Source: Oculina patagonica
Lineage: Eukaryota
Reading direction: 5' to 3'
Length of the DNA: 64,000 nt
Assembly: GCF_052425735.1 (NCBI RefSeq)
Contig: NC_135767.1
Coordinates: 14,322,001-14,386,000, forward strand
Positions 13,038 through 42,870 of the stretch are shown piece after piece. Every line of letters starts with the position of its first letter. Position 1 is the stretch's first letter. The notes beneath the pieces are model-generated. The model saw nothing but the letters and a program-made list of their open reading frames with translations, ran no database searches and had not been told where the DNA came from. The position numbers and the translations under genes are program-made.

Positions 13038-15079
13038 ATGGAGAGTCATTACTTTAACTCAGTTGTTTCTCTCGTGGATTCTGCAGTTTCACCCAGTCCT
13101 CCTGTCCGTGCTTCGTCCTTGCCACCAGTCTTCCGTCCATCGCTGACTGACTTCTCCATCAGAAGGATCCTGGGTCTGGAGAATGACGTAACACATCAAG
13201 AGTCAACATGCTCCGGTGAGTCAAATTTAAGCAATTCTGTAATAGTACGGTCAGTTTGTAATAATTGGATGATTTAGAAACCAAACTGATTGACGTGATA
13301 GAAATATATATATTTCTGTAATAGAGCTGAGGTCACTGATAATTACAAATTAAGCTTCTAGTGGTATAATATCAAGCTACCGGTTGTCTTCAAAATCACC
13401 CTCTCAATCAGTTGAAGACAAGAAATGAAAGGATATAATTTTAGTAGCGAGAATCAGATCTGAAACTTTTGAAGCGCGTATTTGAAGAAACTTGCGTACT
13501 CTCTGCGTACAGTTAGTTGTCTGCCGTACAATGTTTTTTCTTAGTAATAGATGCAATTGCAAATTGATTTCAAAAGTTAATTTTGCGGAAAAGGATACAA
13601 TTTACGTGTCTCATCGAGCAAAAGTCAGAGAAAACGAGAAATGCTATGAGAACACAAGCCGATGTTGCAGCTTTTTCGAGTTTTTTTTTTCTATTTTTTT
13701 TTCTATTTCCTTTCTATAACAAACAAAAGACTGGTCAAATTCACCTCCATGCACATGCTAAAACTACCTGTCAGTTAAAATCCACCTTCATAGAAAAACT
13801 CGAGCGATTTATAAATGTTAATGTTTAATTTTTCGTGAACAGTAGCAGTGGAACTCCGTCACTCCATTCAGACTCCAAGTCCTCAACACAGCTACAGTGA
13901 TACCAGCCCACGATCATCTCCTTATTCCGACAACACAAGTTCCACCAGCGATTGTGACAGCGATCCCGATCAAGTATCGACACATTCCGAGCAGCCACCG
14001 AGAAAGAAGCGACAGCGAACGACTTTCTCGCCGATTGAAGTGTGGGAGCTGGAACGAGCATACAAGCGGCGGCCATATCTAATGTGTGAAGATGAGGAGG
14101 AACTGGTGCAGAGACTTGGTATCCCAGCTAGAAGTTTGAAGGTGAGTTGGATTTAATTATGTTGTGAAAGTTTTGTGCTACTAAAACTTTGACCCCTGAA
14201 TAATTTTTCTTTCATGGTCAATCAAATTATTTATGTGCTGCATTTTGAACGTTTTGAAACTAAAAACAATGAATTTTTCCCCATATTTTTTAAGTCTTTA
14301 AATTGTGGGTTAATTCTAGACAATAATTCATTTAGTTGATTTTTTTTTTATCTTGCCGTCTATCTGTGTGACATTTTATGGATTTTGTTACAAACATACG
14401 CAGAGAAAAGTAAACTCTAGTTATCAAATCAAGTTTTCGAACAATATGAAAAAAAATTCCTGTCTTGGTCTTAGCATGACCAATTTAACATGTTTAGTAA
14501 TGTTATCGTACTTTGATTAATTTTCATTTAAAAAAGCATAGAAAAGGTTTATCGTCGTATACAGTTTTTTTTATTCATTTCAATAAGCGTAATTTTACTC
14601 GAAAATTATTGTAAAACTTTCAAGTCCTTGTTGATCAGGTTGATTTTTTGCTGAATGTATTTAACGATTGATTTGTGGTTTATTTTCAGTATTGGTTTCA
14701 GAACCGCCTAGCCAAATCAAGAAAAGAAGAAAGAAAGGTGACATCCGTCCATCAGACCAGCCCGTCAAACCAGTTTGGGCGTCCTACCACTAGAGTCATG
14801 CCTTGTGAGAGAACCCAGTTTCTGATCCAGTCCCCTTCAGATCACTGGAAGCAAGCTGAACGTATGTCCAACCCAGTGCTGCAAAACCAGTTAGAAGATA
14901 AGCCGCGCAGCCGACCAATTACAGCAGACTACCAGTACTCGTCATTCAAGTCAAACCAGTTTAAAAGCCGTTCATCGTTCCTGTTACCCATGTTCCACCC
15001 GGACCAGTTCAAGAGAAGACCAGCTGAGCCCGCAAGACTATCGTACAGCTGTAACTTACGTAGATACCAGCCGTACTAA
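13038..15079 (+). CDS. Divergent PRD-class (Q50) homeobox protein, copy 1; exons 13038-13215, 13843-14141, 14690-15079; ~288 aa; R53L variant
   Basis: eh1 motif TDFSIRRILGL; homeodomain KKRQRTTFSPIEVWELERAY...SLK|YWFQNRLAK with a phase-0 intron between codons 46 and 47; GT-AG sites keep frame; ends RYQPY*. Confidence 0.88.
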
Positions 15080-15689
15080 ATGTAAGTTTTTGAAAAAGAA
15101 ATGGTCTAAAATACGAAGCAATTTTCATTTTTAACCTATGAATAAAATAGCTTAGACATTTCTCTTTGTAGTGAAGAAAGGAACCGTTTATGTAAACAGA
15201 CGCAATTAGAATAAAACTATTTAGAGTCATTAGAAATGTGTGTTTACTGTAAAAATAAATTAGTGTAATAATCAGATGGTACTAATATAAATAAACACAT
15301 TTTATAGTTAAAAAAGCGTCGTTTTCTTTTGTACTAAGTGTATAATATTTACAGTGCGGCACGCCTTACCGTGGCCACCCAACAAACTTTTTTACAATTG
15401 TGTTTTCGTAATATTATTATTTGTTTGACGAACATGCCTCCTTGCAAAGTTGAATACGATCAAATAGATACTTGTTACATCGTATTTATCAACAAAACGC
15501 AGTGAAAACGTCAAATATTACAATATGACACTTGTAAAAAAAGTTTGTTGGGTGGCCACGGTCACGATAATTTCAGTGCGAAAACCGAATTCAATCATTG
15601 TTTTATCTTTCGAAAAAAGCTGCCGTTTTTCTTAGAATTGGACAATACTTCACTTGAGCAGAATTTTATTTGCAGCAAAATCAGGGGGC

Positions 15690-17262: not shown

Positions 17263-19307
17263 ATGGACAGTCATCACTTTAACTCAGTTGTTTCTCTCGT
17301 GGATTCTGCAGTTTCACCCAGTTCTCCTGTCCATGCTTCGTCCTTGCCACCAGTCTTCCGTCCATCGCTGACTGACTTCTCCATCAGAAGGATCCTGGGT
17401 CTGGAGAATGACGTAACACATCAAGAGTCAACATGCTCCGGTGAGTCAAACTTAAGCAATTCTGTAATAGTACGGTCAGTTTGTAATAATATGATGATTT
17501 AGAAACCAAACTGATTGACGTGATAGAAATATATATATTTCTGTAATAGAGCTGAGGTCACTGATAATTACAAATTAAGCTTCTAGTGGTATAATATCAA
17601 GCTACCGGTTGTCTTCAAAATCACCCTCTCAATCAGTTGAAGACAAGAAATGAAAGGATATAATTTTAGTAGCGAGAATCAGATCTAAAACTTTTAAAGC
17701 GCGTATTTGAAGAAACTTGCGTACTCTCTGCTTACAGTTAGTCGTCTGCCGTACAATGTTTTTTCTTAGTAATAGATGTAATTGCAAATTGGTTTCAAAA
17801 GTTAATATTGCGGAAAAGGATACAATTTACGTGTCTCATCGGGTAAAAGTCAGAGAAAACGAGAAATGCTATGAGAACACAAGCCGATGTAGCAGCTTTT
17901 TCGAGTTTTTTTTCCTATTTTTTTCCTATTTCCTTTCTATGCCCTATAACAAACAAAAGACTGGTCAAATTCACCTCCGTGCACATGCTAAAACTACCTG
18001 TCAGTTAAAATCCACCTTCATAGAAAAACTCGAGCGATTTATAAATGTTAATGTTTAATTTTTCGTGAACAGTAGCAGTGGAACACCGTCACTCCATTCA
18101 GACTCCAAGTCTTCAACACAGCTACAGTGATACCAGCCCACGATCATCTCCTTATTCCGACAACACAAGTTCCACCAGCGATTGTGACAGCGATCCCGAT
18201 CAAGTATCGACACATTCCGAGCAGCCACCGAGAAAGAAGCGACAGCGAACGACTTTCTCGCCGATTGAAGTGTGGGAGCTGGAACGAGCGTACAAGCGGC
18301 GGCCATATCTAATGTGTGAAGATGAGGAGGAACTGGTGCAGAGACTTGGTATTCCAGCTAGAAGTTTGAAGGTGAGTTGGATTTAATTATGTTGTGAAAG
18401 TTTTGTGCTACTAAAATTCTGACCCCTGAATAATTTTGCTTTCATGGTCAATCAAATTATTTATGTGCTGCATTTTGAACGTTTTGAAACTAAAAACAAT
18501 GAATTTTTCCCCATATTTTTTAAGTCTTTAAATTGAGGGTTAATTCTAGACAATAATTCATTTAGTTGATTTTTTTTATCTTGCCATCTATCTGTTTGAC
18601 ATTTTATGGATTTTGTTACAAACATACGCAGAGAAAAGTAAACTCTAGTTATCAAATCAAGTTTTCGAACAATATGAAAAAAAATTCCTGTCTTGGTCTT
18701 AGCATGACCAATTTAACATGTTAAGTAATGTTATCGTACTTTGATTAATTTTCATTTAAAAAAGCATAGAAAAGGTTTATCGTCGTATACAATTTTTTTT
18801 ATTCATTCCAATAAACGTAATTTTACTCGAAAATTATTGTAAAACTTTCAAGTCCTTGTTGATCAGGTTGATTTTTTGCTGAATGTATTTAACGATTGAT
18901 TTGTGGTTTATTTTCAGTATTGGTTTCAGAACCGCCGAGCCAAATCAAGAAAAGAAGAAAGAAAGATGACATCCGTCCATCAGACCAGCCCGTCAAACCA
19001 GTTTGGGCGTCCTACCACTAGAGTCATGCCTTGTGAGAGAACCCAGTTTCTGATCCAGTCCCCTTCAGATCACTGGAAGCAAGCTGAACGTATGTCCAAC
19101 CCAGTGCTGCAAAACCAGTTAGAAGATAAGCCGCGCAGCCGACCAATTACAGCAGACTACCAGTACTCGTCATTCAAGTCAAACCAGTTTAGAAGCCGTT
19201 TATCGTTCCTGTTACCCATGTTCCACCCGGACCAGTTCAAGAGAAGACCAGCTGAGCCCGCAAGACTATCGTACAGCTGTAACTTACGTAGATACCAGCC
19301 GTACTGA
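17263..19307 (+). CDS. Divergent PRD-class homeobox protein, copy 2; exons 17263-17440, 18073-18371, 18918-19307; intact
   Basis: Near-identical to copy 1 including introns, but with canonical WFQNRRAK. Confidence 0.92.
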
Positions 19308-21759: not shown

Positions 21760-24136
21760 ATGGAGAGTCATTACTTTAACTCAGTTATTTCTCTCGTGGA
21801 TTCTGCGGTTTCACCCAGTCCCCCTGTCCGTGTTCCGTCCTTAGCACCAGTCTTCCGTCCGTCGCAGACCGACTTCTCCATCAGCAGGATCCTGGGTCTG
21901 GAGAATGAAGTAACTAATCGAGAACCGACATACTCCGGTGAGATCAAACTTTCGAAGTATTCTGAAAACACTAAGTAATAAGGTTTTAAAGTCAAATGTT
22001 GATACTGAAATCGAAGTGATCATGACGTATAGAGAGGTTGTCCTGATAGAGCAGAGGCCATTAATAATAACAGTATAGATTGATTTTTGATTGAGTGTCG
22101 GAAAACCTTAAGGACACGTACAATCCAGTGAACCAATCAACCTTGAAACAACTGTCATATAACCGGCAGGAAACGCGGAAAATGTGTGCGATTGTTTTGG
22201 TTTTACATGTAATTGCTCAAGAAAGTTGCGCAAATTTTTTTAGCTATGAGCAATCACAAAGCGTAGACAAAAAAATCCATAGCAAACGCTTAATACTTTT
22301 GATACTCATGTGAAAATCAATCTTGTTTTCAAAGTTTATTTCTAGCGGAAATATAATTCTGTTTGATGACCCGATCAAGTTAACTGAATAGACCACCAAT
22401 TTACCAACAAAGGTCTAACAAGTACGGATCTAGTGTGTAAAGGAAACACGCTAACGTACACTGTGCAATAAGTTATTCGTATGCATTCTGCTTAGAAGTC
22501 TAGGAACTATTTGATGAAAAATAAATTACCTCGGTACATTTAAATTTTAACGAAGTTCAACTGTTTTTCCCGGATATAAGCCGTCCATAAATTTCCTGCA
22601 TTTTGCTATGTATCCATTAAACAAGTTAAATTGGTATAGAAATTACACATCGTAGAAAACTTCTTTATCAGATGTTAACGATCTTTTTTTTTCAACAGCG
22701 CTGGTGGAATGCCGTCACTCCATTCAGACTCAAAGTCCTCAACACAGCTACAGTGATACCAGCCCACGATCATCTCCTTATTCCGACAACACAAGTTCCA
22801 CCAGCGATTGTGACAGCGAACCCGATAAAGTTTCGACACATTCCGAGCAACCATCGAGGAAGAAGCGGCAGCGAACGACCTTCTCGCCGATTGAAGTGTG
22901 GGAGCTGGAACGAGCGTACAAGCGGTGGCCATATTTGATGAGTGAAGATGAGGAGGAACTGGTGAAGAGACTTGGTATCCCGGTTAGAAGTTTGAAGGTT
23001 AGTTCCTTTGATTTTGTTTAGGAAAAATAGTGACGTTGTTTGACCGTTAACCTAATCAAGAACCAATAGCTGATAAAGCTAAATTGTCGCATCATAAACC
23101 TTAAAAAATATTTGCAAAGGAATGTTAATAAGGTTTTTTTTAATAGTATTAGATACGGTCGTAGATAGTCTTAGTTACACGGCCCCATAACCTATTTTAG
23201 TTTTAAGTTTTTTCACCGTGTAAAATTAAAAGTTGTTGTTGTTGTCATAATTTTAGCAACATTTGTTGTTTAGGTTTTGAGAGAATGCAGAAAGTGAATT
23301 TTTTTGTTATTCTGGCATAACAAGGAGACGTCGTTACGCTTTTTATCGTAATTTTTACCTGTTAGACAAATTTAAACGTAGGCAAATCCAGTGTTACATA
23401 TTTTTACCACAATATAACTTGGTGACAAGTCAAGAAATTTATCTAAAGAGGTCGACTGGATTCCAAAAAATTCCAAAAACGTTAGTGCAAGTTCTCAAGC
23501 TAAAATCTGGGATAGGAAAGTTAAAAGACGAGGAAGTTATTTTTCAGGAGGTTAACACTATTTAAACTTACTTATCTTTGCTAGTGCATCACAAAATGGC
23601 GTCCAAACACCCCGTCGAAATTTGTTGACGTCTTGACACGTTGGAGGTCGAGTCTAATACAATCAGTTCAGCTTAGTTTCAGCCACGTTCAAAGTGGACT
23701 ATTTGAAAAACACGGATAACAGGAAGGTTAAGTCTGACAACTCGGTTAACGGAAAGTTCTTCTTTTTTTATTCTTTCAGTACTGGTTTCAGAATCGTCGT
23801 GCAAAGTCAAGGAAAGACGAAAGAGAGTCAGCATCCATCCGTAAGACCGACCGGTCAGACCAGTTTGGGCCTTCCACCAGCAGACTCCATCTCGAAAGTT
23901 GGCAACCACGGCGACAACAGTTACCTGTCAATCACGGCTGGCAGATTCACCGTGAGTTCCTTACAGTGCAGGCACACCGGTCAAACCAGTTGTCACACAC
24001 GCCTCAAGTGACAGTTAAGCATCCCTCGTCACTCCAGTTACCCATGTTCCACCCAGACGAGTTCAAGAGCCGACCAGTTACCGAGCCCGCAATGCTACCG
24101 TTCAGCCGCAGATTACATAGATACCAACCGTATTGA
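21760..24136 (+). CDS. Divergent PRD-class homeobox protein, copy 3; exons 21760-21937, 22699-22997, 23780-24136
   Basis: TDFSISRILGL; homeodomain ...SLK|YWFQNRRAKSRKDE. Exon 3 (not in the ORF track) is open for 119 codons, ending PMFHPDEFK...RLHRYQPY*. Confidence 0.9.
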
Positions 24137-24734
24137 ATGTTTATTAATTAATCAATAATAACAATAATAGCCGCATCGATGTGAAGCTTTCATCAGTTAA
24201 CTGTTTGTTTCTATTTATTAAGGGGTCTATTAAATAATTATATTACCGCATGATTATCTGTAAATAAGGACTTGTATTAAATAAGATATATTTGCTTATA
24301 GCAATAAAGAGTTAGCACAAATATTGTACCATAGATAAGTTTTGAGTGTAAATAAAATATCATTTGTAACTGCAATCCGACTGAGTGTTGTGTTTCGGGA
24401 AAATTATCCTGTTTTCTAATTTCATTCCTACCTTCGATTAAGGAAAATACACTGAAACGGAAAATATACTGTGTTCCAGTTATCCCCAAAGCGGTTTTAT
24501 ATTCCCTTGTTCTCTAACATATCGTGTCTTTGTTCCCTTGTTCCCCAGTTGAAACAAGCCATGTTCCCTTATTCCCCCAAATCACCTCAATATGGTGGTC
24601 ATAATATCAAACACGCAGTGTAGTATATTCCACCATCAAAATTATTTCAGGTCTGAAAATTTAAATATAACATAAAAAAACTTAGTAGATAATAAAGATG
24701 GTAAATTTTAATCGTCTATTATCTACTAAACACT

Positions 24735-24947: not shown

Positions 24948-25290
24948 AAAAAAAAAAGAAACTTGTTTGTGCGACAATCTTAAAAACACGTTCATCCGGG
25001 ACATCATATAGAGCAACACTGAACCGATACCAAAATTTGCCTACCTAATGAGATTTGATAAGGCTCAGTACTGTAAATAGTGCTAGTTAATTACTTGCTA
25101 TCATATCCGCCCGTCAAAAAACTGGTTTGACGAGTTAGCGATCGTGCAAGAGCATGAAACCGAGGCATTTCCCTCATTAGCTGTTGTTTTTTTTCGCTCG
25201 CCATCCGGCTGGTCCTTTGTAAGTACGTTTCGCCACGTGGCTACTGGAAGCTGAAATAAACAACTCTTCCAACCTCAGGGGAAATTCACA

Positions 25291-28200
25291 ATGGCATTCG
25301 TTCGTTTTTGGACCTTTGATATACCACGGTTAACACCTTTAAGGAGACTTATGGTTTTAGCGACGTGTATCACGTGTCTTGTATTTATGGTGTATTTTAG
25401 TTATGAGTTTAAGTACCTTTGGAAAATACAGCGCCACCCTACGATTTCAAAAGAGTAAGTTATTCTATTTTATTTTATTTTCAAAGTTTTCTGTTAATGG
25501 CTTCAATATAGGTGGATTTCAAGTTGACTGTCCAAATCTTTGCATACGTTTCTCGGTTCTACGTTATTTTTTTTTATCTATCAGCTCTACCCATCCGGAA
25601 CCCACCTTTTACGGTAAAGGCTATAATTACTCACACGTCGGTTACAGGTGTAAAAATATTGCTGCTCTCTCCTTAATTAAGAAGCCCAGAGATAGGATAG
25701 GTTTTCTCGCTTTCATACGTTTTATTTAAAACAGCGGTTAATTACAAATTCACAAATGTTACAGCAAGTGATACCAAAGCAAATAACATTCATTTCTTTG
25801 GTTTTGTGAGATCGCTCCAGCTGTTGACTGTGAGCCCATGAAATAAAGATTTATTGCTGAATACAATTTCAGTTCTCTTTGAGCTATTTATTTTGTCTGT
25901 CAACAAAACACGAAACCCTAAATATGAAATACCAAAGAGAATCCAGTTTAGAGTTTTCACGAGCTATCACGGCGTCTTTTTTACGGATGCAAATTAGGTG
26001 GTCCGATATTCCGAAGAAACTATCGTTGTTCTCTTGTCGACACAAAAGAGACCGTTGTTATATATAAACCAACAGAACAAACAACAGCTTATAAATCGGA
26101 GTTGTCTACTGTACTTAAGCTTATAAATTTCAGGTTTAGCTCTCCCTAAAATTTTGGATAATTTTCTCTCATTTGCTGTAAAATTATCTCAACGACACAA
26201 TTTATTGAAAATTTAACTAAACCACTGAAATAGATACTAGACAATTTAAATTGTATTTAAAAATACTATCAGATACTATCTAGAGGTATTGTTCCTTTGT
26301 TGTTACTGGGGTAACAGAGATAAAACACCCGTTATTATTATCTGAATAAAATCACTGCTGCGCTCCGAGATGCAGTTAAGACAACCTTAGCCGCAGACAA
26401 TGTTTTTTCAACATCATTCATTCGATGGAGAAAAATTTCTCACTTGAGTGTCGAAAGTAAACTGCGTTTGCTTTGGTTTTGCATTACTACGTTTAGTGAT
26501 TGGTTTAAAAATCCGCGCCACTTTCTCAGCAAATCAGAAGTACAACCCAAACCAATCGTGACTCGCACGCACACGTTTTCCCGCGCCTCGTGCCGGCTAC
26601 AGGTATTTGCTTCGAGTTTTGATTGGTTCACTAGATTGTCTGCGTCCTTTGTGATTGGCCAGAGTAATTACTTTGGTTTTGGTTTCACGACACTTAATTG
26701 AAAATTGCTTTAAAGGCCTAGAAAAGAAAGTGCCTTCTTTTATGAACTACCACGGGAATAAATTAACGACGCCTTTTGGCGCTCGTACGATATCGGTGTT
26801 AATAAAGAGGTCAATTTTTAAAATGAATTTAACTATTTGTGACTTTTATAGAAACACTAAAGGCTTTCAAACTGTAAAACGAATTTATATTTTAAGAAAA
26901 AACGTATGCCTACTCACGCCTGACACAGTTAACTGCTCATATTGGAACGTGTCCTTATCATAGGGTTATTTTACAAGAAGATGTATATCGATTCTACCGG
27001 AACATACTGACGTTTCTGTAATCACCGAAGAGTCCGTACGAAGTAATTCGATTTCTCTATTTTTTCGCGTAGAATATCAAAAGTTACAAATTTAATCATT
27101 TTTTTATATTTGTCTTAACAGGCAACTTGAAACAGCAGCAAACACTATCAAAAGTGCAATCAGTACAAACCAAGAGGCAACAGTTCGTAAATGCTCTCCA
27201 ACACAGCAAGTCCTTTTTCTCAAGACGCACAAAACAGGCTCCACCACAATCGCCAATATATTTTTCCGTTATGGCGACTCACGAGATCTTTCATTTGTAC
27301 TTGGTCAAGACACGTTAATTGGTTGGCCTCGCCGCTTTCAGGTCTCCTTTGCGTTACCTTTTGATGGACCCCAGCCGAACTTTCTATGCAGTCACACGAG
27401 GTACAATCAGAAACCGATGAATTACCTCTTCCCTAAAACGAACTCAAAATACGTGACCATTCTACGAAACCCCGTTGACCAGTTCGAGTCGATTTTTAAC
27501 TATATGGGTTTGGGCGATATTTATGGTTTCGGCCGAGACCCGAGAAGGTCGTTACAGGAATTTCTCGCCACGGGTATCGAATTTGAAGACGTTTTCGAAA
27601 AAGAAGCTACACGCTTGGTCAGAAATCCCATGTTGTTCGACTTAGGATTGGGCTTCAAATTTCACCAGAACGCTACGGCTGTTAAAGAATACATCGCGTT
27701 TCTGGACAAGGAGTTTGATTTAATCATGATTACAGACTACTTCGACGAATCTGTGGTGTTGCTAAAGCGCTTGCTTTGCTGGGAATTGGACGATGTTCTT
27801 TATTTTAAATCTAACGAGAGACAAGACAAAGAAAGAGCTGTGGATTTGAGCGAGGAAGTTAAAGAGAATATTAAACGATGGAATGCAGCCGACCAGTTAC
27901 TGTTCGATTTCTTTAACCAAACGTTTTGGTACAAAATAAAAATGGAGGGAGAAGGATTTTATGACGACCTGGCTGCTTTTCGTCAGAAGAAAGAGCAAAT
28001 AAGACGCTTGTGTTTGTCAAACGGAACAAGCCTTCAGTTACAGTACGGCCACAAGTATGTCAAGGGAGTTTCCTTGAAGCAAAACTTGAACGCTAAAACA
28101 AGAGAGCACTGCGAAAAAATGACAAGAAGTGAGAATTCGTATCTGACGTATTTACGCAGGAAAAGGTCAATGAGATTAGCAGCTCTTAGTGCAGCAGCGG

Positions 28201-28385
28201 CAAATGAGAGGAACGAGGAAATGACTAGCTGGGATGTAGCGAGCGACCTTAAATATACTCCAATATTACAAAGTGATGTGAAAGTAGACCTTAAAAGAAA
28301 GATGCGGGCAAAACGGGCACGATATCAGAGATATAACCATGGCAAGGTCTGGCCGAGGAGTGGGACAAGGAGAAACAGAAAATAG
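25291..28385 (+). CDS. Galactose-3-O-sulfotransferase family protein, copy A; exons 25291-25454 and 27122-28385 (possible small middle exon ~26964-27030)
   Basis: Exon 1 encodes a type II membrane anchor (RRLMVLATCITCLVFMVYF). The main exon has FLKTHKTGSTT (5'-PSB), TILRNP.DQFES (3'-PB), FDLIMITDYFDES and WN.AD..LF..FN; compatible phase-2 splice sites. Confidence 0.9.
26436..26704. mobile_element. ~265-bp interspersed MITE-like repeat (other copies ~22088-22310 and 61436-61680, opposite strand)
   Basis: TTGAGTGTCG...CGACACTTAATTGAAA inverted ends; three copies in the window. Confidence 0.7.
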
Positions 28386-30072: not shown

Positions 30073-32510
30073 ATGGAGAATAATAGATTTCGTTCAGTTA
30101 TTTCTATTCTGGATCCTCCGGCCGGTAGACACGCACATGTACTGCCTCCAACCTCGAGTCCAACGCCCTTGAAACCAGTCTCCAGTAAGACACTATCCTT
30201 CTCCATCAGCGCGATCTTGGGTCTAAAAGATGAGGAAAAACGCCAAGATTCACCAAGCATCGGTTAGTAACTCTTCAGATTTCTTTAATCGTGCTATAAT
30301 CTGATCCACAGTGTGAATCACATATTTCATAGCTATAAACTTTGGAGTCTGAACGTAAATTCAGAGACACCCAACAGACCGTTTCGGTGAATATCTGTTC
30401 GGAAGATCTATAATTGCCTACGATTTTCAGATTAAAGTGTGATGAAAAACTGGAGTTTTCTGTTTACCTCAACATTTTGAGACATGGGAAAAGTAACGAC
30501 TGCTTTTTGTGGAGAGAGAAAAATATCGTTTTGGGTATGAAAAAAGGCCAACTACGTTTTTCAAGAAGGCAATAGTGGCTCGTAAACTCGGGTAATAAAG
30601 TTTCGTTCCCTAAAATTTTCTAAAGTTTGAAAGTTCAGCTAGCGTTTGCGAAAAGATACACTTTTCTTAGCATTTAAAAATAAGGCTTTAAATCGCACAA
30701 AATGGACACTTATAACATGTAAACGATGTTCTGACACCTATAGTAAAATTTTCTCGTTGGGTGTCCCTGTAAATTAGCCGCGATTTCATACGTAAACTGA
30801 TCGTAACACTTCGAGCGTTAGTACTACGTAGGAGGGAACCGTAAGGCATCAAAGTTAGTTTAATACTATAACTTGAACGAGATTTAAGAGATTTGAGCGC
30901 TCGGCCAAAACCGGCCAAAGGATATAAATTGAGCACAAGGCTCGACTTTTTCTAACATGCCTACCATTATTAGATTTGTCACAACATTTTTTTTGTCATG
31001 AACATCCTGCTAAAAGTTAGCTTTTTTAATGTTTGATACAACATAAATCCATTTGCGTCGGATTAGTGTTAAGACCCCATCTACTTGAATGTATAAATTA
31101 GGAACAAAACTTGTTAGTTGTGCAACTACAATAAGAAATGCTTCAAACATAGTGGAACTTAACATAAATTAAGAATAAGTTGCGTTGTCATGTTAATTTC
31201 TTTGGAGAATGGAATTTTTAGCCGTTATATGACTAAGGTTTTAAACTACTTTGTTTTAATTTGTTTGCTATTATTTTCAGCGAGAAACACGCTACAGTCT
31301 GAACTGTGTGTCCGCATTCCAAGTCCTCAACACAGCTACAGTGATACCAGCCCACGATCATCGCCTTATTCCGACAACACAAATTCCACCAGCGAATGTG
31401 ACAGCGAACCCGATCAAGTATCGACACATTCCGAGCAGCCATCGAGAAAGAAACGACAGCGAACGACATTCTCGCCGATCGAGGTGTGGGAGCTGGAGCG
31501 AGCGTACAAGCGGCGGCCATATTTGATAGCTGAAGACGAGGAGGAACTGGTGCAGAGACTTGGTATCCCGGTTAGAAGTTTGAAGGTGAGTTGGATTTAA
31601 TACTCTTACCATGAACGTTTTTGTGACTGAAGGTTAGATTTGTTCAAGTTCAAATGAATACTTGTCATCCGGTGCATTTCGAGACTCAAATCAGCGGTCT
31701 CGACAGCAAAATTATAATTCAGCCTCCATTCTTATTAGTACATTGCTAGTAATTTTAATCATATTAATTTTGAGAATTTTAAATCATTTAGAAAATATCC
31801 TTGATAGTTGATTTTTCAACTATCATGCGCCATTTAATTAGCAAGGAAAAATCAATACACTGAATGACTTTTTTCGATCATCAAATCAGGTTTTTAAACT
31901 TTACGAAAATTCTTTTATGTTTCGTTTCCAGACTGTTCAATTGAATTAGGTATCACTAAATTGTCACTGCTATATTCCATCCAACCATAGATTTAGATAG
32001 AATTGTGTTTTCCTTGTTATAAAAATTTGCATTGTTGACGGCGTCAAATTTTACTTCAAAGGTTTTCGAAGCCATTGTTTACAATCAGGTTGATATGTTG
32101 AATGTAACCAATTTTGTTTGTTTGTTCATTTCAGTATTGGTTCCAGAACCGACGAGCCAAATCAAGAAAAGAAGAAAGAAATGTGACGTCTGTCCATCAG
32201 ATCAAACCAGTTTGGGCGTCCTGCCAGCAGAGTAATGCCCATTGTCAGACCACAGTTTCCGATCCACTCCCCTTCTGATCACTGGAAGCAAGCTGAACGC
32301 GTGTCCTACCCAATCCCGGAAAACTACGCAAAAGGAGACGAGTCGCGCATTCGACCAATCACATCAGACTACCATTACTCGTCATTCAAGTCAAACCAGT
32401 TTAGAAGCCGTTCATCGTTCCTGGTACCCATGTTCCACCCGGACCAGCTCAGGAGAAGACCAGTTGGGCCCGCAAGACTATCGTACAGCCGTAGATTCCA
32501 GCCGTACTGA
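30073..32510 (+). CDS. Divergent PRD-class homeobox gene, copy 4; exons 30073-30262, 31281-31585, 32135-; frameshift gives stop at 32278 (ancestral stop 32510)
   Basis: SFSISAILGL eh1 and an intact homeodomain. 8-bp deletion (CCAGCCCG) at ~32201 relative to paralogs; the original C-terminus persists in ORF 32235-32510. Confidence 0.85.
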
Positions 32511-35661: not shown

Positions 35662-36097
35662 AATATTTAACATTTTGTCCGTTTTCACTAGCGATGACGT
35701 TCTATATTTTTTGTTTACTTTGAGAGTTACTCATGAATCGCTTAACGAATTTTTTTTGCTTTAAAAATATTTTTATTCGAGTCATAATAAATATAAAAAT
35801 GCTTCATCATTGAAACGAAGCACTGGACCGATACCAAAATTTGCATAGCCATTGAGATTTGATGATGCTCAGTACTGTAAATATTCCTAGTTAATTACTT
35901 GCTATCATATCCGCCCGTCATAAAAAAACTGCTTTGACGAGTTAGCGGGTTATCGTGCAAGAGCATGACACCGAGGCATTTCACCGATAAGCTGTTGTTT
36001 TTCGCTCGCCATCCGGCTGGCCCTTCAAGACTACGTTTCACCACGTGGCTACTGGAAGCTGGAATAAATAACCCTTCCTTCCTCGGGGCAAATCACA

Positions 36098-39000
36098 ATG
36101 GCATTCGTTCGTTTTTTGACTTTGCACATGCCGCGGTTAAGAAGTCTTCTGGTTTTAGCGACGTGTTTCACATGTAGTCTACTTATGGTCTATTTTAATT
36201 ATGAGTTTAAGTACTTTTGGAAAATACAGCGCCACCCTACGATTTCAAAAGAGTAAGTAATTTTATTTTACTTTATTTTCTTGTTTGAAAATTTTCTGTT
36301 AATGGCTTCAATATAGGTGTACTTCAAGTTGACTGTCCAAGCGGTTCATTCGGAACCCTCCTTTTACGATGAAGGTTAAAATTAACCTCACATCGGTTAA
36401 AGGAGAAATATTTCTCCTATCTTCTCCTGATCTGTTCGTGATTAAGGAGCCCAGAGATGATAAGTTCATTACAAATTCACAAATGTTACCGCAGCAAGTG
36501 ATAACAAAAGCAAATATAATTTATTTGTTTTTTATGTGCTCGCTCAGCTGTTGACTGTATTAGCCCATGAAATAAAAAAAATGCTGAATATTAATTTTTG
36601 TTCTCTTTAGACCACTTATTTTTGGTCAATAAAAGATGAAATACTAAATATCAGATCGATGCCAAAGAGAATCATTTTTTTATAGTTTTCACGAGCTTTC
36701 AGGAGCATTACGGCACCTTTTTCCAGATGCAAATTAAGTGGTCCGATATTCCAAAGCTAAATACAAAAGTAAATATCTTTGATCTCTTGTCGACGCAAAG
36801 AGACTGTTGTGATATTAAATCAATATAATAAATATCAGCTTGAAAATCGGAGTTAGCCACTATTTCGGTTAAAATTGTCATCAAAACTTTGAGTGATTTT
36901 CTCTCATTTGCTGTTAAATTATCTAAACGACACAGTTCATTGAAATTTTACTAAATCAATGGATATGAAATAGATACTAGACAAATTCATAGTTTAACTG
37001 TATTCAAAACCAATATCAGGTACAATTGCATTGTTTCTTTGTTGTTTTTACTCTTGCAAATCCGTTGCTAGGATAACAAAGAATCCTCAGAATTATAACA
37101 GAGATAACTTTTGATGTTTGTTCAAGGAATAAAATCTCTGTCTACGTCGTTTTTCTCTGATAAAGATAATGGCGCGTCATTTAGCTTCGAGGTAGTGCGG
37201 GGAGAAAACCCCAGTGCAGACTATGGTTTTGCGGTCATTAGATGGATAAAAATGACTTGCTATTAACATATCTAAGTAGAAAAGAAATTGTTCCTTCTTT
37301 TGTGAATTAAAACGGGATAAAAGTGCAAAGGAGTAAGCTACGATGCTATCTTTACGCTCGTATGACATAAGTTTCACAAGTTTCGTTTTGCTGTATTTCA
37401 CTAGCCACCCGGTAGGTATCGTGTTTCGTTTGTGGACTTGTGGTTTTCATTTGCTATAGTTGTAATTTTCGATTCATACTGTAAGTGTTGATAATTATTT
37501 CATAGGTTTCGAATTCATTTACCGATGGTGTGAATAAAATTGAGTTTTGGGATCCCAAACGTTGATTGAGTCTTTGATAACGGTGTGCCGATGACCTACA
37601 ACTGAAGCTTTCGAAACCTAATAGTATATCTTTTTCCATCGGTAAAGAATTCCCCGTTATAAACTAAAGTTATTTCTTGAGCAACACAGTTAACTGACCG
37701 TAATGGAAGGTGTCCTTATTATAGGGTTATTATACAAGAAGATGTAAATCGATTTTTACCGGAACGTACTGACGTTTCTGTGATCACCGAGGAGTCCGTA
37801 CGAAGTCAGATTCGATTTCTCTATTTTTTCGCGTAGGATATCAAAAGTTACAAATTTAACCATTTTTTATATTTGTCTTAACAGGCAACTACAAACAGCA
37901 GCAAACTCTATCAAAAGTGCAATCAGTACAAGCCATGAGTCAAGAGTTCGTAAATGCTCTCCAACACAGCAAGTCCTCTTTCTCAAGACGCACAAAACAG
38001 GCTCCACCACAATCGCCAATATATTTTTCCGTTATGGCGACTCACGGGATCTTTTATTTGTACTTAGTAAAAACACGTTAATTGGTTGGCCTCGTCGCTT
38101 TCAGGTCTCCTTTGCATTACCTTTTGATGGACCCCAACCGAACTTTCTATGCAGTCACACAAGGTACAATCGAAAACCGTTGAATTACCTCTTCCCTAAA
38201 ACGACCTCAAAATACGTGACCATTCTACGAAACCCTGTTGACCAGTACGAGTCGGTTTTTAACTATATGGGTTTGGGCGATATTTATGGTTTCGGCCGAG
38301 ACCCGAGAAAGTCTTTAGAAACATTCCTCAGCACAGGAATAGAATTTGAAGACGTTTTCAAAAAAGAATCTACACGCTTGGTCAGAAATCCCATGTTGTT
38401 TGACTTAGGATTGGCCTACAAATTTCACCAGAATGTTACGGCTATCGAGGAATACATCGCATTTCTGGACAAGGAGTTTGATTTAATCATGATTACAGAC
38501 TACTTCGACGAATCTGTGGTGCTGCTAAAGCGCTTGCTTTGCTGGGAATTGGACGATGTTCTTTATTTTAAATCTAACGAGAGACAAGACAAAGAACGAG
38601 CTGTGGATTTGAGCGAAGACGTTAAAAAGAATATTAAACGATGGAACGCAGCCGACCAGATACTGTTCGATTTCTTTAACCAAACGTTTTGGTACAAAAT
38701 TAAAATGGAGGGCGAAGGATTTTATGACGATTTGGCAGCTTTTCGTCAGAAGAAAGGGCAAATAAGACGCTTGTGTTTGACACATGGAACAAGCCTTCAA
38801 TTACAGTACGGCCACAAGTACGTCAAAGGAGTTAACTTAAAGCATAACTTAAACGCCAAAACAAAAAAGTACTGCGAAAGAATGACACGTAGTGAGAATT
38901 CGTATCTGGAGTATTTACGCAGGAAAAGATCAATGAGATTAGCAGGTCTTAGTGCAGCAGCGGCAAATGAGAGGAATGAGGAAATGACTAGCTGGGATGT

Positions 39001-39145
39001 AGCGAGCGACCTTACATATACTCCAGTATCACAAAACTCTGGAGCAGTAGACCTTGCTAGAAAGATGAAGGGGCGTGGAAGAAATCAGGGATATAACCGT
39101 GTCAGGATCTGGGCGAGGAGTGGGACAAGGAGAAAAAGACAATAG
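36098..39145 (+). CDS. Galactose-3-O-sulfotransferase family protein, copy B; exons 36098-36252 and 37885-39145 (possible middle exon from 37725)
   Basis: Same anchor exon, PAPS-binding motifs and splice phases as copy A; open frame. Confidence 0.9.
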
Positions 39146-40395
39146 TAAATCGGGCCTCATATCATTGAAGGGAAGCCCGGCATTAAAAGATACTTTAAAA
39201 GAATGCAGCTTAAATGAACGGGCGATACGAATTGGTCACCTTGACTTTAAAGTTTGAGTCTTGAAACAAACTTAACCTTAAAAGGAATTATGTAGCGGCA
39301 ATGAAGCCTTTTATTGCGGTTTTTAAATTAAATGGAACCTCAGAATCATAGCTGTGCTAGCTATAGGTATTGAAACACCAACTAGGAGAAGGCAGAAATA
39401 ACTCTTTACTCAAATTCTGAGTTGGGAAAATTCGACGTCCCATTTGCCCTCGGCGAGGACTAGCAAAGTGATAAAATAAAGCGTTAATATATCGCTATGG
39501 AGTGTCGAGCTGTCGCATGCCTTTGACGTTTGTCCGGCCATAGAGCCGGCAAATGGTTAGAAAGTACTTGAAAAATGTTGTTAAACCTTGCCGAAAAAAT
39601 GCTTTTTTCTTTCAGGGAGCATAGCCTTTCGGTGCAAGGAGCCGGCAGTTTATTTTTTCAGCCGAGTATTGTCAGCTCTTTAGTATTTTAAAATATCTTT
39701 TTGTCCCGCGAGGATCCCGCTTCTGAATATGTCAGACAGCGTCGTTCGTAATTCATTCAGTCACATATAACGTTCTGATTAGTAGTAATTAAATCCGGCT
39801 GAGAGATTGATCGTAAACGTTAAAACCTTTTTACTTTTCAGACGAGGAGAAGAACCTGTTTTCACAGTTTTTTTTTATTGAACTGAAGCTCACGAAATTC
39901 AGTTAACTGAAAACACGGCCCGCGGGAAAAAATTTTGAAGGAGCGCTTTCGCATTCAGTCTTTTTCAAAAGCCATCGGTCTTTTATACTGATAGCGCGCA
40001 CCCAGAACAAAGTAAAAAAAAAAGGACAGTAAACTTTCGTTTTGGTCGGCCTTTTAGGCTGCGCAAAAAAATCAATAGCGCCCTTAACCGAGTTTCATAA
40101 AAGCTGCCCTCTAAATGAAATAACCTTTTGATCAGACATGCCCTCCCTTTGTGTTACATTGCCGCGTGCGGATCATTAGTAATAGTTATAGCCGTTTATC
40201 ACAGCGTGCAGTCTTTTTGATATTTCTATTATGTCCCAGTTCTCGGCAAAGTAACAAGAAAACAACTTCTTTGTCGGACCGCTTTTTTGATGTAAATTGT
40301 TGCCAGCTCCCGAGGTATAAATAAGCTTTACGATGATCTTGCGTTCATTCAGTTTTTAAACAGACAGTAAAACACCACAACACAGTACTTGTATA

Positions 40396-42870
40396 ATGGA
40401 AAATAACAGATTTCGTTCAGTTATTTCTACTCTGGATCCTTTGCTCGGTAAACCACATGTAGTGTCACCCACCTCGAGTCCAACGCCCTTGGAACCAGTC
40501 TCTAGAAAGTCACTGTCCTTCTCCATCAGCGCTATCCTGGGTCTGAAAGATGATGAAAGACGCCAAGATTCACCGAGCATCGGTAAGTAACTCTTCAAAG
40601 TGCTTTGTTGATGATCTACATTGTAAATCACTTATTTCAAGCTATAATCTTTGGAGAAATCATCCGCAATTTATCACGTGAAATGATCATAACATTTCGA
40701 GTGTTAGTACTTCGTAGGAGAGAACAGTATGACATCAAAGTTAGTTCAATACAATGTTTTAAGTTTTCTTAAGATACTGGACGAAATTAAACAGAATATT
40801 TGTTGAACAGATGACCAAAAGCGGCTAATGAATATAAATTGAGCCTAATGCTCGCCTTTTTCGTTGTCATGAACATCCTTCTAAAAGTTAAATAAGTTTA
40901 AATATATCCTAGATCTATTTGTGTCTAGGGCTTTCCACAAGTTGCTCGTAAAATTTGCTCGAAATGTCTGAAAAAGGTGCTCGAAAGGTAATCCAAAAAT
41001 ATAAAAATCTAGAAAAAGCTTTTGATTAAACAAGTTGCTCGAAAGTTACCCCAAAAACTCCAAAACGCTGCATTTTATCAAAAAAAATTCCAAATATATG
41101 CTAACCTCCCTTTGAAGGTAATATTTCTAAGCAGATTAATGCAATGTCTTTGCAACAGAAGTATGAAATCTGTTGAATTGCAGGGAATTCTAGCAACTTG
41201 TGGAAGCTCTGTTTTTGTCGGATTAGTGTTTAGACCCCAATCTACTTGAAGGTACAAATTATAAACAACACTTGCTAGTTGTCCAACTCAACTTCAAAAT
41301 CCTTCTCGCAAAGTGAAAACGTTACACAATTAAAGATATTAGTTGCGATGGCATGTTACTAACTTTGGAGACTAGAATTTGGTAGTTGTTACGCGACTAT
41401 ATGTGTAAAAAACTTTTTTTATATTTGTTTAATACTAATTACTTTCAGAGCGAAACACGCTTCTGTCTGAACTGTGTGTTCGCATTCCAAGTCCTCAACA
41501 CAGCTACAGTGATGGCAGCCCACGATCATCTTCTTATTCTGACAACACAAGTTTCATCAGCGATTGTGACAGCGAACCCGATCAAGTATCGACAAATTCC
41601 GAGCAGCCACCGAGAAAGAAGCAACAGAGAACGACCTTCTCGCCGATTGAAGTGTGGGAGCTGGAACGAGCGTACAAGCGTCGGCCATATTTGATAGCTG
41701 AAGATGAGGAAAAACTGGTGCAGAGATTTGGTATCCCGGCTAGAAGTTTGAAGGTGAGTTGGATATCGATTTATCGCACTTACTGCGAAACTTTTTTTAC
41801 TGAAGATTAAGAGTTTTCAGAATAAAACTGCTGGAGCGATCTCTAGTCATAGCTTATAATATAAAAAATGTTTAAAACAGATCTAAAAATATAAAACGAT
41901 ACTCTAAATTTTCGATCGCCTTCTTCGGTCTTCTTCAGAGAATGATGGATTTTTGCAAGGTTCGCAGAATTCTAATAAGCTACATCGACATTATTGTTCG
42001 TTGTCCCCCTGGGGAGCAACTAGCGATGCGTAAACCCTTGGGAAGGGCGCTCTTTCGTTTATAGTGTTTTTGTCGAGGAAGGAATGCAAGGATTCCAGAA
42101 ACAGTCTTTTTGTTCTTGCTGCTTACACCTGTTTCAAGAATTTCGGCGTAACTTGGATGTATGTCGTGGCCGATTTCTGCATGATGTTTAAGAAATCAGG
42201 ATTTCGAACCTTACAAAAATTATTATATTTTTTTCCTGACTGATCAAATTGATTTGTTATTGTAACGTATGCTTTTAATGAAATACGTCCACGACAATAC
42301 TCACTGAATTGTTACTGTAATATTCTGTTCTAACCATAAATTTAAATAAAATTGAGTTTTTCTTGTTATAAAAATTGCATTGTTGATCGGTACGGCGTCA
42401 AAATCTACCTCAAAGGTGTTCGCAGCATTTGTTTACAATCAGGTTTATATGTTACATGTTACCAATGTTTATTTGTTTCTTTATTCCAGTATTGGTTCCA
42501 GAACCGACGGGCGAAATCAAGAAAAGAAGGAAGAAAAGTGGCATCCGTCCATCAGACCAGCCCGTCGAACCAGTTTGGGCGTCCTGCCAGCAGAGTAATG
42601 CCCATTGTCAGACCACAGTTTCCGATCCAGTCCCCTTCTGATCACTGGAAGCAAGCTGAACGTATGTCCTACCCAGTGCTGGAAAACCAGTTAGAAGATA
42701 AGCTGCGCAGTAGACCAATCACTGCCGACTACCATTACTCGTCATTTAAGTCCAACCAGTTAAGAAGCCGTTCATCGTTCCTGGTACCCATGTGCCACCC
42801 GGACCAGTTCAAGAGAAGACCAGCTGAGCCCGCAAGACTATCGTACAGCCGTAGATTCCAGCCGTACTGA
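40396..42870 (+). CDS. Divergent PRD-class homeobox protein, copy 5; exons 40396-40582, 41449-41753, 42490-42870
   Basis: SFSISAILGL; homeodomain KKQQRTTFSPIEVWELERAY...SLK|YWFQNRRAK; ends RRFQPY*; frames verified across both introns. Confidence 0.9.
40926..41211. mobile_element. hAT-type MITE in intron 1 of copy 5
   Basis: TAGGGCTTTCCACAAGTTGCT / AGCAACTTGTGGAAGCTCTG TIRs; 8-bp TSD TTTGTGTC / TTTTTGTC; absent in copy 4 (~31055). Confidence 0.78.

What the first reader, a model, noticed from the sequence alone, without database searches (positions are those of the whole stretch)
13038..42870. Homeobox paralogs are mosaics, apparently recombined within exon 2
Promoter, exon 1 and the start of exon 2 group copies 1/2 with copy 3 (MESHYFNSV.., VE.RHSIQT). 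The intron-2 donor context (GTGAGTTGGAT) and exon 3 group copies 1/2 with copies 4/5 (VHQTSPSNQFGRP..SPSDHWKQAER), while copy 3 exon 3 is distinct. The homeobox exon is nearly identical in all five although introns between subfamilies are largely dissimilar. Inference: unequal crossover or gene conversion in exon 2 shuffles promoter/N-terminal and C-terminal modules around a homogenised homeodomain.
Basis: partly seen in the sequence, partly recalled or inferred. Interest (0 to 1): 0.7.

Follow-up and report, generated by a model that had tools for sequence, protein, structure and literature searches.

The report
Coral homeobox paralogues swapped halves
Five neighbouring homeobox genes of the stony coral Oculina patagonica really are patchworks: front and back halves of two old gene types were recombined inside the shared homeobox exon. 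This is a clean example of a well-known way for gene families to evolve, not a new mechanism.

Summary
The window (O. patagonica, chromosome-scale contig C10) holds five three-exon PRD-like homeobox genes with an eh1 motif. Exon 1 and the promoter group copies 1/2 with 3. Exon 3 groups 1/2 with 4/5. The 268-bp exon-2 core is 90-95% identical in all five.

Five copies alone do not prove recombination, because the exon-1 and exon-3 trees share one unrooted topology. The rest of the genome settles it. A sixth gene 0.7 Mb away (g13637) has a copy-4/5-type front and a copy-3-type back, so all four combinations exist. Exon trees conflict (AU p <= 3e-5). Synonymous divergence is 0.12-0.30 in shared modules and 0.56-1.6 in unshared ones. 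Introns and flanks follow the modules.

Copies 1/2 carry the ancestral "alpha" combination found in six other coral genera. Copy 3 (alpha front, beta back) and copies 4/5 (beta front, alpha back) are the chimeras, and all breakpoints map to the exon-2 core.

That core is homogenised within Oculina (dS 0.15-0.21 between alpha and beta, against 0.35-0.45 between species). The mechanism is ordinary: unequal crossover plus gene conversion. The scan noted similar mosaics in other gene arrays of this genome.

The parts
13038..15079 (+). c1: intact alpha-type gene (A1 front, C2 back), 288 aa. Exons 13038-13215, 13843-14141, 14690-15079.
   Evidence: Model. It is colinear with other alpha genes across both introns (87% over 1.8 kb to g14296).
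17263..19307 (+). c2: a recent tandem duplicate of c1 (alpha type), 288 aa. Exons 17263-17440, 18073-18371, 18918-19307.
   Evidence: 97.3% identity to c1 over 2854 bp. It equals GenBank model ACROYT_G033734 apart from an upstream start codon.
21760..24136 (+). c3: chimera with an alpha front and a beta back (A1+C1), 277 aa, intact. Exons 21760-21937, 22699-22997, 23780-24136.
   Evidence: Triplet test: 74 alpha-like against 2 beta-like sites in exons 1-2, and 22 against 101 in exon 3; max chi-square 118.9, p<=0.0005. Trees and AU tests agree. A transcript-like contig skips 22998-23779 (GT..AG), joining exon 2 to exon 3.
22730..22997 (+). c3 breakpoint interval, the exon-2 core. The last A1-diagnostic sites lie just upstream and beta-type intron 2 starts just downstream.
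22998..24392 (+). Beta-type 3' module of c3: intron 2, C1 exon 3 and 256 bp of 3' flank. It is homologous only to g13637.
   Evidence: 23753-24392 aligns to the g13637 locus at 80.5%, and 51% of intron 2 aligns to g13637 intron 2 and to no alpha gene.
25048..31317 (+). Beta-type 5' module of c4: about 5 kb of upstream sequence (including a sulfotransferase exon), A2 exon 1, intron 1 and the first 37 nt of exon 2.
   Evidence: Colinear with the region upstream of g13637 (81-90% identity). Intron 1 aligns only to A2-type genes.
30073..32510 (+). c4: chimera with a beta front and an alpha back (A2+C2). The homeodomain is intact, but an 8-bp deletion after 32201 shifts the frame, giving a stop at 32276-32278 and a 212-aa product.
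   Evidence: It equals ACROYT_G033736.
31318..31585 (+). c4 breakpoint interval (exon-2 core).
   Evidence: Sharp switch from beta-like to alpha-like at the start of the core. Intron 2 is alpha-type.
35853..41485 (+). Beta-type 5' module of c5, a duplicate of the c4 unit.
40396..42870 (+). c5: chimera with a beta front and an alpha back (A2+C2), 290 aa, intact. Exons 40396-40582, 41449-41753, 42490-42870.
   Evidence: It equals ACROYT_G033738.
41486..41753 (+). c5 breakpoint interval (exon-2 core).
13874..14141 (+). Exon-2 core of c1. It encodes a Ser-rich linker and homeodomain residues 1-46. This is the tract homogenised among all family members in this genome.
   Evidence: 15 near-full copies at 90-100% identity genome-wide. 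dS is 0.15-0.21 between the alpha and beta types.

Best explanation
The window holds part of a stony-coral-specific family of PRD-like homeobox genes that carry an eh1 motif and are probably Groucho-dependent repressors.

Two old gene types exist in O. patagonica.
- Alpha has an A1 front (upstream region, exon 1, intron 1) and a C2 back (intron 2, exon 3, 3' flank).
- Beta has an A2 front and a C1 back. It is represented by g13637 at C10:13636239-13640111, 0.7 Mb from the window.

The 268-bp core of exon 2 (linker plus homeodomain residues 1-46) is kept nearly identical among all copies by gene conversion. It is therefore the only stretch where alpha and beta genes can pair.

Homologous exchange inside that core produced both hybrid types. 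I favour unequal crossover or a Lepore-type deletion between neighbouring genes, but long-tract conversion is not excluded.
- c3 has an alpha promoter and N-terminus with a beta C-terminus.
- The ancestor of c4, c5 and the pseudogene g13650p had a beta promoter and N-terminus with an alpha C-terminus.

Copies c1 and c2 are ordinary alpha genes, duplicated recently.

Shown here: the modules, their different ages, the breakpoint interval, the fourth combination, and low exon-2 dS. Inferred: crossover versus conversion, the order of events, and the repressor function.
For: 1. Four-gamete evidence. A genome census finds A1 exon 1 in 11 copies, A2 in 4, C2 exon 3 in 12 and C1 in 2. All four combinations occur: A1+C2 (c1, c2 and at least 5 more), A1+C1 (c3), A2+C2 (c4, c5, g13650p) and A2+C1 (g13637).

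2. Tree conflict. In ML trees, exon 1 puts c3 with alpha and puts c4, c5, g13650p and g13637 together (100/99). Exon 3 puts c3 with g13637 (100/100) and c4/c5 with alpha. Each exon rejects the other's grouping (AU p from 3e-5 down to 1e-76).

3. Synonymous sites.
- c3 against alpha: exon 1 dS 0.12-0.30, exon 3 dS 0.82-1.0.
- c5 against alpha: exon 1 dS 0.69-0.83, exon 3 dS 0.21-0.30.
- g13637 against c4/c5: exon 1 dS 0.155. g13637 against c3: exon 3 dS 0.24.
- In the unambiguous 16-codon homeodomain tail, 7-9 of about 9 synonymous sites differ between c3 and the other copies.

4. Non-coding DNA follows the modules. Intron 1 aligns only within the alpha genes (c3 excepted; see evidence against) or within the A2 set. 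Intron 2 aligns within the C2 set (including c4, c5 and g13650p) or between c3 and g13637. More than 5 kb upstream of c4 and c5 is colinear with the region upstream of g13637.

5. Breakpoints. Max chi-square places the switch at the two edges of the exon-2 core (p<=0.0005). The core alignment shows a sharp edge shared by all A2 genes.

6. Polarity. The A1 hallmark (TDFSI) is coupled with the C2 hallmark (PSNQF...DHWK) in Desmophyllum, Orbicella, Pocillopora, Montipora and Acropora, and in shortened form in Porites. LSFSI-type genes elsewhere lack the C2 hallmark. c1 is colinear with other alpha genes through both introns.

7. Homogenisation of the core. Alpha against beta dS is 0.15-0.21 in Oculina. 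It is 0.35-0.45 for alpha orthologues between Oculina and Desmophyllum, and 0.60 for alpha against the LSFSI-type paralogue P0017 (Dp_b) within Desmophyllum. An A2-type gene from another coral (ENA contig L038) is no closer in the core to Oculina A2 genes than to Oculina alpha genes.

8. Splicing. A transcript-like contig joins exon 2 to c3's C1 exon 3 exactly at the predicted splice sites.
Against: - The exon-2 core has too few informative sites for its tree to reject alternatives (AU p 0.24-0.42). Homogenisation therefore rests on dS, not on topology.
- The Desmophyllum gene P0017 groups with A2 and with C1 in the trees, but it sits on long branches (dS >1.4). Its tail is no more similar to C1 (38%) than to C2 (42-44%), and it lacks the sulfotransferase neighbour. 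An ancient A2+C1 beta gene is the most parsimonious reading but is not demonstrated.
- The 5' unit of g13637 is as close to c4 and to c5 as they are to each other. g13637 could itself be a secondary recombinant.
- c3 intron 1 is mostly not alpha-like: 18% matches c1/c2, and it holds a dispersed repeat.
- Crossover and long-tract conversion cannot be told apart.
- The RNA contig does not link A1 exon 1 to C1 exon 3 in one molecule.
Confidence: 0.8

Rival explanations
1. Polarity. Copies 1/2 are the recombinants, made from a copy-3-like parent (A1+C1) and a copy-4/5-like parent (A2+C2). g13637 would be the reciprocal product.
For: Within the genome alone the four-gamete pattern is symmetric. The 5' unit of g13637 is not an outgroup to c4/c5, which fits g13637 being derived.
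Against: The A1+C2 combination is found in six other coral genera and in at least 8 Oculina copies on two chromosomes. c1 is colinear with those copies through both introns. A2+C2 and A1+C1 were seen in no other species.
Confidence: 0.07
2. The same chimeras arose without crossover. Long-tract (1.3-6 kb) or repeated gene conversion overwrote one half of a resident gene.
For: The 3' tracts are only about 1.3-1.7 kb and end about 260 bp after the stop codon. Conversion clearly acts on the exon-2 core. c3's alpha-type similarity is patchy, because intron 1 is largely unmatched.
Against: The beta-type tract of c4/c5 runs at least 5.3 kb upstream and includes a neighbouring gene's exon. Alpha and beta share no homology distal to the tracts to resolve a conversion event.
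Confidence: 0.25
3. There was no exchange. Exon 1 evolved fast on the c4/5 branch and exon 3 evolved fast on the c3 branch, while the homeobox exon is simply conserved by purifying selection.
For: For the five window genes, the exon-1 and exon-3 trees have the same unrooted topology, so only branch lengths differ. Exons 1 and 3 evolve fast at the protein level (dN/dS 0.3-0.9).
Against: The fourth combination exists in g13637. Synonymous divergence, introns and several kb of flank differ in step with the exons. Exon-2 dS is not low between species (0.35-0.45).
Confidence: 0.02
4. Assembly artefact: near-identical exon-2 cores caused paralogues to be mis-joined.
For: The switch points lie in a 268-bp stretch that is 90-95% identical among 15 copies.
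Against: The core is short relative to long reads. c4 and c5 are two diverged copies (81-88%) of the same chimera, and g13650p is a third copy 0.7 Mb away. A spliced contig from independent runs supports the c3 exon 2-exon 3 junction with c3-specific exon 3 (130 of 133 nt).
Confidence: 0.03

Closest known systems
Haemoglobin Lepore / anti-Lepore and red/green opsin hybrid genes (unequal crossover between tandem paralogues; from general knowledge)
   Same: Hybrid genes join the 5' half (with its promoter) of one paralogue to the 3' half of its neighbour. Both reciprocal types exist, and the exchange falls in a stretch of high identity.
   Different: Here the hybrids are fixed, duplicated, old (dS 0.1-0.3) members of a developmental transcription-factor family, not recent disease or polymorphic alleles. 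The parents are far more diverged outside the exchange tract.
Homeobox-centred gene conversion between the PRD-class TPRX1/TPRX2 (ETCHbox) genes of mammals (J Mol Evol 2021, PMC8208926)
   Same: Both are PRD-class, fast-evolving, lineage-specific homeobox paralogues. Conversion is concentrated on the homeobox-containing part. A breakpoint separates partitions with different trees.
   Different: In TPRX the breakpoint lies downstream of the homeobox and only two loci are involved. Here the homogenised tract is a 268-bp exon core bounded on both sides, and whole front and back modules (promoter, introns, flanks) are reassorted into all four combinations.
Other mosaic tandem arrays noted by this scan in the same genome (FReD lectin array s1-291647; BTB-PHR array s1-294033)
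   Same: An invariant middle exon or shared part, with front and back modules having different nearest relatives. Those follow-ups judged them ordinary recombination between neighbours.
   Different: They are different gene families. I did not re-examine those loci.

Membership tests
PRD-class (paired-like) homeobox genes | Homeodomain recognised by the Pfam Homeodomain model, with nearest solved relatives in the PRD class | tested here: met
   PF00046 at E 6.9e-07 on exon 2 alone. The best PDB hit is Paired (1fjl), followed by Aristaless and DUX4. The next-best non-family proteins are Rx/Arx.
PRD-class (paired-like) homeobox genes | Intron between homeodomain residues 46 and 47; Gln at position 50 | tested here: met
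   Exon 2 ends ...SLK and exon 3 starts YWFQNR in all copies.
PRD-class (paired-like) homeobox genes | Orthology to a named bilaterian PRD family (Rx, Arx, Otp and others) | tested here: not met
   All strong hits are stony corals. Rx/Arx appear only at E 1e-9 to 1e-11 and about 35-45% identity over the homeodomain. This is a coral-specific PRD-like family.
eh1 (Engrailed homology-1) Groucho-dependent repressors | FSIxxIL-type eh1 motif N-terminal to the homeodomain | tested here: met
   FSI(R/S)RILGLE in A1 exon 1 and FSISAILGL(K/E) in A2 exon 1, conserved in all coral homologues.
eh1 (Engrailed homology-1) Groucho-dependent repressors | Binding of Groucho/TLE and repression of transcription | not testable with these tools
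Function is inferred from the motif only.
Chimeric paralogues made by non-allelic homologous exchange (Lepore type) | Two segments of one gene have significantly different nearest relatives, including silent sites and non-coding DNA | tested here: met
   AU tests, dS, intron matrix, flank colinearity and max chi-square.
Chimeric paralogues made by non-allelic homologous exchange (Lepore type) | All four combinations of two diverged modules are present (four-gamete criterion) | tested here: met
   A1+C2, A1+C1, A2+C2 and A2+C1.
Chimeric paralogues made by non-allelic homologous exchange (Lepore type) | Crossover (change in copy number or gene order) rather than conversion | tested here: inconclusive
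   The long 5' beta tract (at least 5.3 kb) favours crossover. The short 3' tracts and the lack of outgroup synteny leave conversion open.
Concerted evolution by gene conversion | Paralogues within a species are more alike at silent sites than orthologues between species, in a bounded tract | tested here: met
   Exon-2 core dS is 0.15-0.21 for alpha against beta in Oculina, 0.35-0.45 for Oculina against Desmophyllum alpha, and 0.60 for alpha against the LSFSI-type paralogue Dp_b in Desmophyllum. The 5' edge is sharp. The topology test has no power.

The most novel reading that the evidence does not exclude
The exon-2 core may be more than a passively homogenised stretch. It could act as a maintained recombination hub that lets this coral-specific repressor family reassort promoters and N-termini with C-terminal tails. 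On this reading the intact hybrids (c3, whose exon 2-3 junction is seen in a transcript-like contig, and c5) are retained because the new promoter-by-tail combinations have distinct developmental roles. The head-to-tail adjacency of the two reciprocal hybrid types (c3 directly followed by c4) would then reflect a single event that inserted a beta-array segment into an alpha gene.
Probability: 0.12. Interest if true: 0.55.

Novelty: new member of a known kind. Interest (0 to 1): 0.35.

Why it matters
It gives a well-resolved example in a cnidarian developmental transcription-factor family of how a short homogenised exon lets old, otherwise unalignable paralogues exchange regulatory/N-terminal and C-terminal modules. 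This has practical consequences for coral gene annotation and phylogenetics. Whole-gene trees of this family will be misleading, and orthology must be called module by module. The hybrids place one type's promoter in front of the other type's protein tail, which offers natural "swap" constructs for asking what the tails and promoters do. The mechanism itself is textbook.

Tried and rejected
- Five-gene trees alone. I rejected these as proof because the exon-1 and exon-3 trees share one unrooted topology (reasoning).
- Using Desmophyllum P0017 as a clean beta orthologue. The trees group it with both A2 and C1. I down-weighted this because dS exceeds 1.4, its tail is equally similar to C1 and C2, and it has no sulfotransferase synteny, so long-branch attraction is possible.
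- Searching for C1-type tails in other species. Only the query's own protein (P0105 = g13637) came back. The search is word-based, so the blank is weak.
- Searching for A2-type fronts. This found one 2-kb ENA contig from another coral with exon 1 and exon 2 but no exon 3, so its tail type is unknown.
- Exon-2 core topology tests. They had no power.
- RNA evidence. Only Logan contigs of runs whose RNA status is a guess were available. They cover exons only and give one exon 2-exon 3 junction for c3. Exon-1 contigs could come from alpha paralogues, so a full-length chimeric transcript is not shown.
- Downstream colinearity of c3 with g13637 beyond 256 bp after the stop. None was found.
- Complex prediction, structure prediction and RNA-family tools were not used, because they do not bear on the question.


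Full report
**What is in the window.** The window is C10:14322001-14386000 of the Oculina patagonica assembly. It carries five + strand genes of identical design.
- Exon 1 is 178-190 nt and encodes an N-terminus with an eh1 motif (FSIxxILGL).
- Exon 2 is 299-305 nt and encodes a Ser-rich linker plus homeodomain residues 1-46.
- Exon 3 encodes YWFQNRRAK and a tail of about 110 residues ending in (Y/F)QPY.

Pfam recognises a homeodomain, and the nearest solved structures are PRD class. Strong homologues occur only in stony corals (Desmophyllum, Orbicella, Porites, Pocillopora, Montipora, Acropora), under a scatter of automatic names. Rx/Arx come next, at E around 1e-9. This is a coral-specific PRD-like family of probable repressors.

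**Checking the observation.**
- c1 and c2 are a 97.3%-identical recent duplicate.
- c1 matches c3 over the promoter plus exon 1 (12892-13228, 90.6%) and over exon 2 (93.4%), but hardly at all in exon 3 (39.5% protein identity).
- c1 matches c4/c5 from nucleotide 32 of exon 2 onward (92-93%) and in exon 3 plus the 3' flank (80-89%), but not in exon 1 (34-40% protein identity).
- c4 has an 8-bp deletion after 32201 that truncates the tail.

**Why five genes are not enough.** For five taxa, both the exon-1 and the exon-3 tree are ((c1,c2),c3,(c4,c5)) when unrooted. Only the long branch moves. Protein-rate heterogeneity could in principle mimic that, so I tested silent sites, non-coding DNA and additional copies.

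**Silent sites.** Nei-Gojobori dS for the five genes:
- Exon 1 plus the first 10 codons of exon 2: c1-c3 0.21, c4-c5 0.29, and the c1-c3 group against c4/c5 0.74-0.99.
- Exon-2 core: every pair between different gene types (c1/c2, c3, c4, c5) 0.155-0.215.
- Exon 3: c1-c4 0.20, c1-c5 0.27, and c3 against the rest 0.82-0.99.
- In the 16 codons of homeodomain helix 3 encoded by exon 3, where the alignment is unambiguous, c3 differs from the others at 7-9 of about 9 synonymous sites.

The modules really are of different age.

**The rest of the genome.** The exon-2 sequence hits 17 places, 15 of them near full length at 90-100% identity, on C10, C4 and C7. Separate searches find the A1-type exon 1 eleven times, A2-type four times, C2-type exon 3 twelve times and C1-type only twice. 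I fetched the loci and modelled them. They comprise:
- at least seven intact alpha genes (A1+C2): c1, c2, g14134, g14007, g14296, g14058 and C4_35422;
- degenerate alpha copies;
- c3 (A1+C1);
- c4, c5 and the pseudogene g13650p (A2+C2);
- g13637 (A2+C1, equal to ACROYT_G033654/P0105, intact, 279 aa).

All four combinations of two deeply diverged module pairs exist, and that requires exchange.

**Trees and tests.** ML trees per module use Desmophyllum and Orbicella sequences fetched with their DNA. They give the A2 clade 100/99 support in exon 1 and give c3 plus g13637 100/100 support in exon 3. Exon 2 puts all 14 Oculina copies together, apart from the other species (84/94). AU tests reject forcing the exon-3 groups on exon 1 and the reverse (p from 3e-5 to 1e-76). 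The short exon-2 core cannot reject anything (p 0.24-0.42).

**Non-coding DNA follows the modules.** In an all-against-all local alignment of introns:
- Intron 1 aligns among the alpha genes (23-100% coverage) and, separately, among the A2 genes.
- Intron 2 aligns among C2 genes, including c4 (46% to g14007, 87% to g13650p) and c5. Separately, it aligns between c3 and g13637 (51%).
- c3 intron 1 is the exception. Only 18% matches c1/c2, and it holds a dispersed repeat of about 210 bp.

Upstream of c4 and c5, more than 5 kb is colinear with the region upstream of g13637 (81-90%). This stretch includes the last exon of a galactose-3-O-sulfotransferase gene. c1, by contrast, is colinear with alpha genes such as g14296 across intron 1, exon 2, intron 2, exon 3 and the 3' flank (87% over 1.8 kb).

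**Breakpoints.** I ran a triplet analysis comparing each query with the alpha consensus and with g13637.
- c3 is alpha-like at 74 of 76 informative sites through exon 2, then beta-like at 101 of 123 in exon 3.
- c4 and c5 are beta-like at 63 of 68-70 sites up to nucleotide 37 of exon 2, then alpha-like at 110-119 of 118-125.
- Max chi-square is 119-143, with permutation p<=0.0005.

The core itself carries almost no alpha/beta-diagnostic sites. Each exchange can therefore only be placed somewhere within the 268-bp core (c3 22730-22997, c4 31318-31585, c5 41486-41753). The alignment shows a knife-edge 5' boundary shared by all four A2 genes, and beta-type intron sequence immediately after the c3 donor site. 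c4, c5 and g13650p share a private AGC change (Met-Ser to Ile-Ala) in the core. That points to one origin for the A2+C2 hybrid, followed by duplication.

**Polarity.** The coupling of the A1 hallmark (T(D/N)FSI) with the C2 hallmark (PSNQF...DHW(K/R)) is seen in Desmophyllum, Orbicella, Pocillopora, Montipora and Acropora, and in shortened form in Porites. LSFSI-type genes in Desmophyllum and Acropora lack the C2 hallmark. Alpha is therefore the old arrangement, c1/c2 are ordinary alpha genes, and c3 and c4/c5 are the chimeras.

The claim that an A2+C1 beta gene is equally old is the parsimonious reading, but it is less secure.
- The only candidate outgroup (Desmophyllum P0017) sits on long branches, and its tail is as similar to C2 as to C1.
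- The 5' unit of g13637 is not an outgroup to c4/c5.
- An A2-type exon 1 plus exon 2 exists in another coral (ENA contig L038), so the A2 lineage at least predates O. patagonica.

**Homogenisation of the homeobox exon.** Exon-2 core dS between Oculina beta and alpha genes is 0.15-0.21, the same as among alpha genes. Orthologous alpha genes of Oculina and Desmophyllum differ by 0.35-0.45 in the same core, which is no lower than in exons 1 and 3 (0.22-0.36). Synonymous constraint therefore does not explain the similarity. Desmophyllum alpha and the LSFSI-type paralogue P0017 (Dp_b) differ by 0.60. The L038 core is equally distant from Oculina A2 and alpha cores (79-81%). The core has thus been converted among paralogues within the Oculina lineage.

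**Dating.** Module dS between the hybrids and their parental types (0.12-0.30) is at or below the Oculina-Desmophyllum alpha value. This places the exchanges around or after that split. They are old enough for duplication (c4/c5), dispersal (g13650p, 0.7 Mb away and inverted) and decay (c4, g13650p).

**Expression.** Contigs of three runs from one study cover only the exons of c3. One 175-nt contig skips 22998-23779 (GT..AG), joining exon 2 to c3's own exon 3 (130 of 133 nt match, against about 86% for g13637). This supports the gene model and the use of the C1 exon. It does not link it to A1 exon 1 in one molecule.

**Mechanism and comparison.** The simplest route is non-allelic homologous exchange in the only tract where alpha and beta genes are alike, as in haemoglobin Lepore/anti-Lepore or opsin hybrids. 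The tract would be kept alike by conversion, as reported for the homeobox part of mammalian TPRX1/TPRX2 (PMC8208926). Crossover is favoured for c4/c5 by the multi-kb beta tract, but conversion cannot be excluded.

The scan has already noted the same style of mosaic in lectin and BTB-PHR arrays of this genome. I did not re-test those. The finding is real and tidy, and it matters for annotation and phylogeny of coral homeobox genes, but it is a new instance of a known process.

Noticed in passing
window 27417-28385 and 38180-39145 (+): ORFs of 322 and 321 aa matching the C-terminal two thirds of galactose-3-O-sulfotransferase (PF06990, E 4.7e-48). They are co-duplicated with each A2-type homeobox gene, here and at the g13637 locus, so the repeat unit of about 10 kb is sulfotransferase exon plus homeobox gene.
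   Followed up: partly
window 14708-14710: c1 has Leu (CTA) at homeodomain position 53, where c2 and every other copy and species have Arg. This is a normally invariant DNA-contact residue. c1 and c2 differ by 10 nonsynonymous and only 2 synonymous changes.
   Followed up: no
window 32201/32202 and 32276-32278: An 8-bp deletion in c4 exon 3 causes a frameshift just after the homeodomain and a premature stop. The gene is annotated as a 212-aa protein. Higher dN/dS downstream of the deletion fits decay of the tail.
   Followed up: partly
window 22110-22316 (c3 intron 1): A dispersed repeat of about 210 bp with at least 277 candidate copies on many chromosomes at about 72% identity. It is probably an old MITE/SINE-like insertion.
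   Followed up: partly
window 12978-13037, 17203-17262, 21700-21759: A1-type genes have an in-frame ATG 60 nt upstream of the conserved Met, and GenBank/RefSeq models start there (MDSSFSL...). Other corals and the A2 genes lack it, so the annotated start is doubtful.
   Followed up: no
G000:C10:13649379-13651987 (-) and G000:C4:35441993-35445878 (-): Two decayed family members. g13650p has lost its exon-2 acceptor and has an in-frame stop in exon 3. C4_35443 has no start codon and a broken exon-2 donor. Isolated fragments also occur on C7:19253779 and at C10:14107208 and C10:14128677.
   Followed up: partly
L032 (Orbicella faveolata MZGG01000778.1) 2715-4934 and 10001-12223: Two tandem alpha-type copies 7.3 kb apart with the same tblastn identity to the Oculina exon-1 and exon-3 queries (about 1 point apart in exon 2). 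Recent duplication or conversion therefore also occurs in Orbicella.
   Followed up: no
window 44245-53417, 62360-63529 and 53625-54791: Further repeated blocks (47269-49636 against 51057-53417 at 89%, with inverted copies near 62.4-63.5 kb) and a tandem array of about 200-bp units. They are unrelated to the homeobox genes.
   Followed up: no
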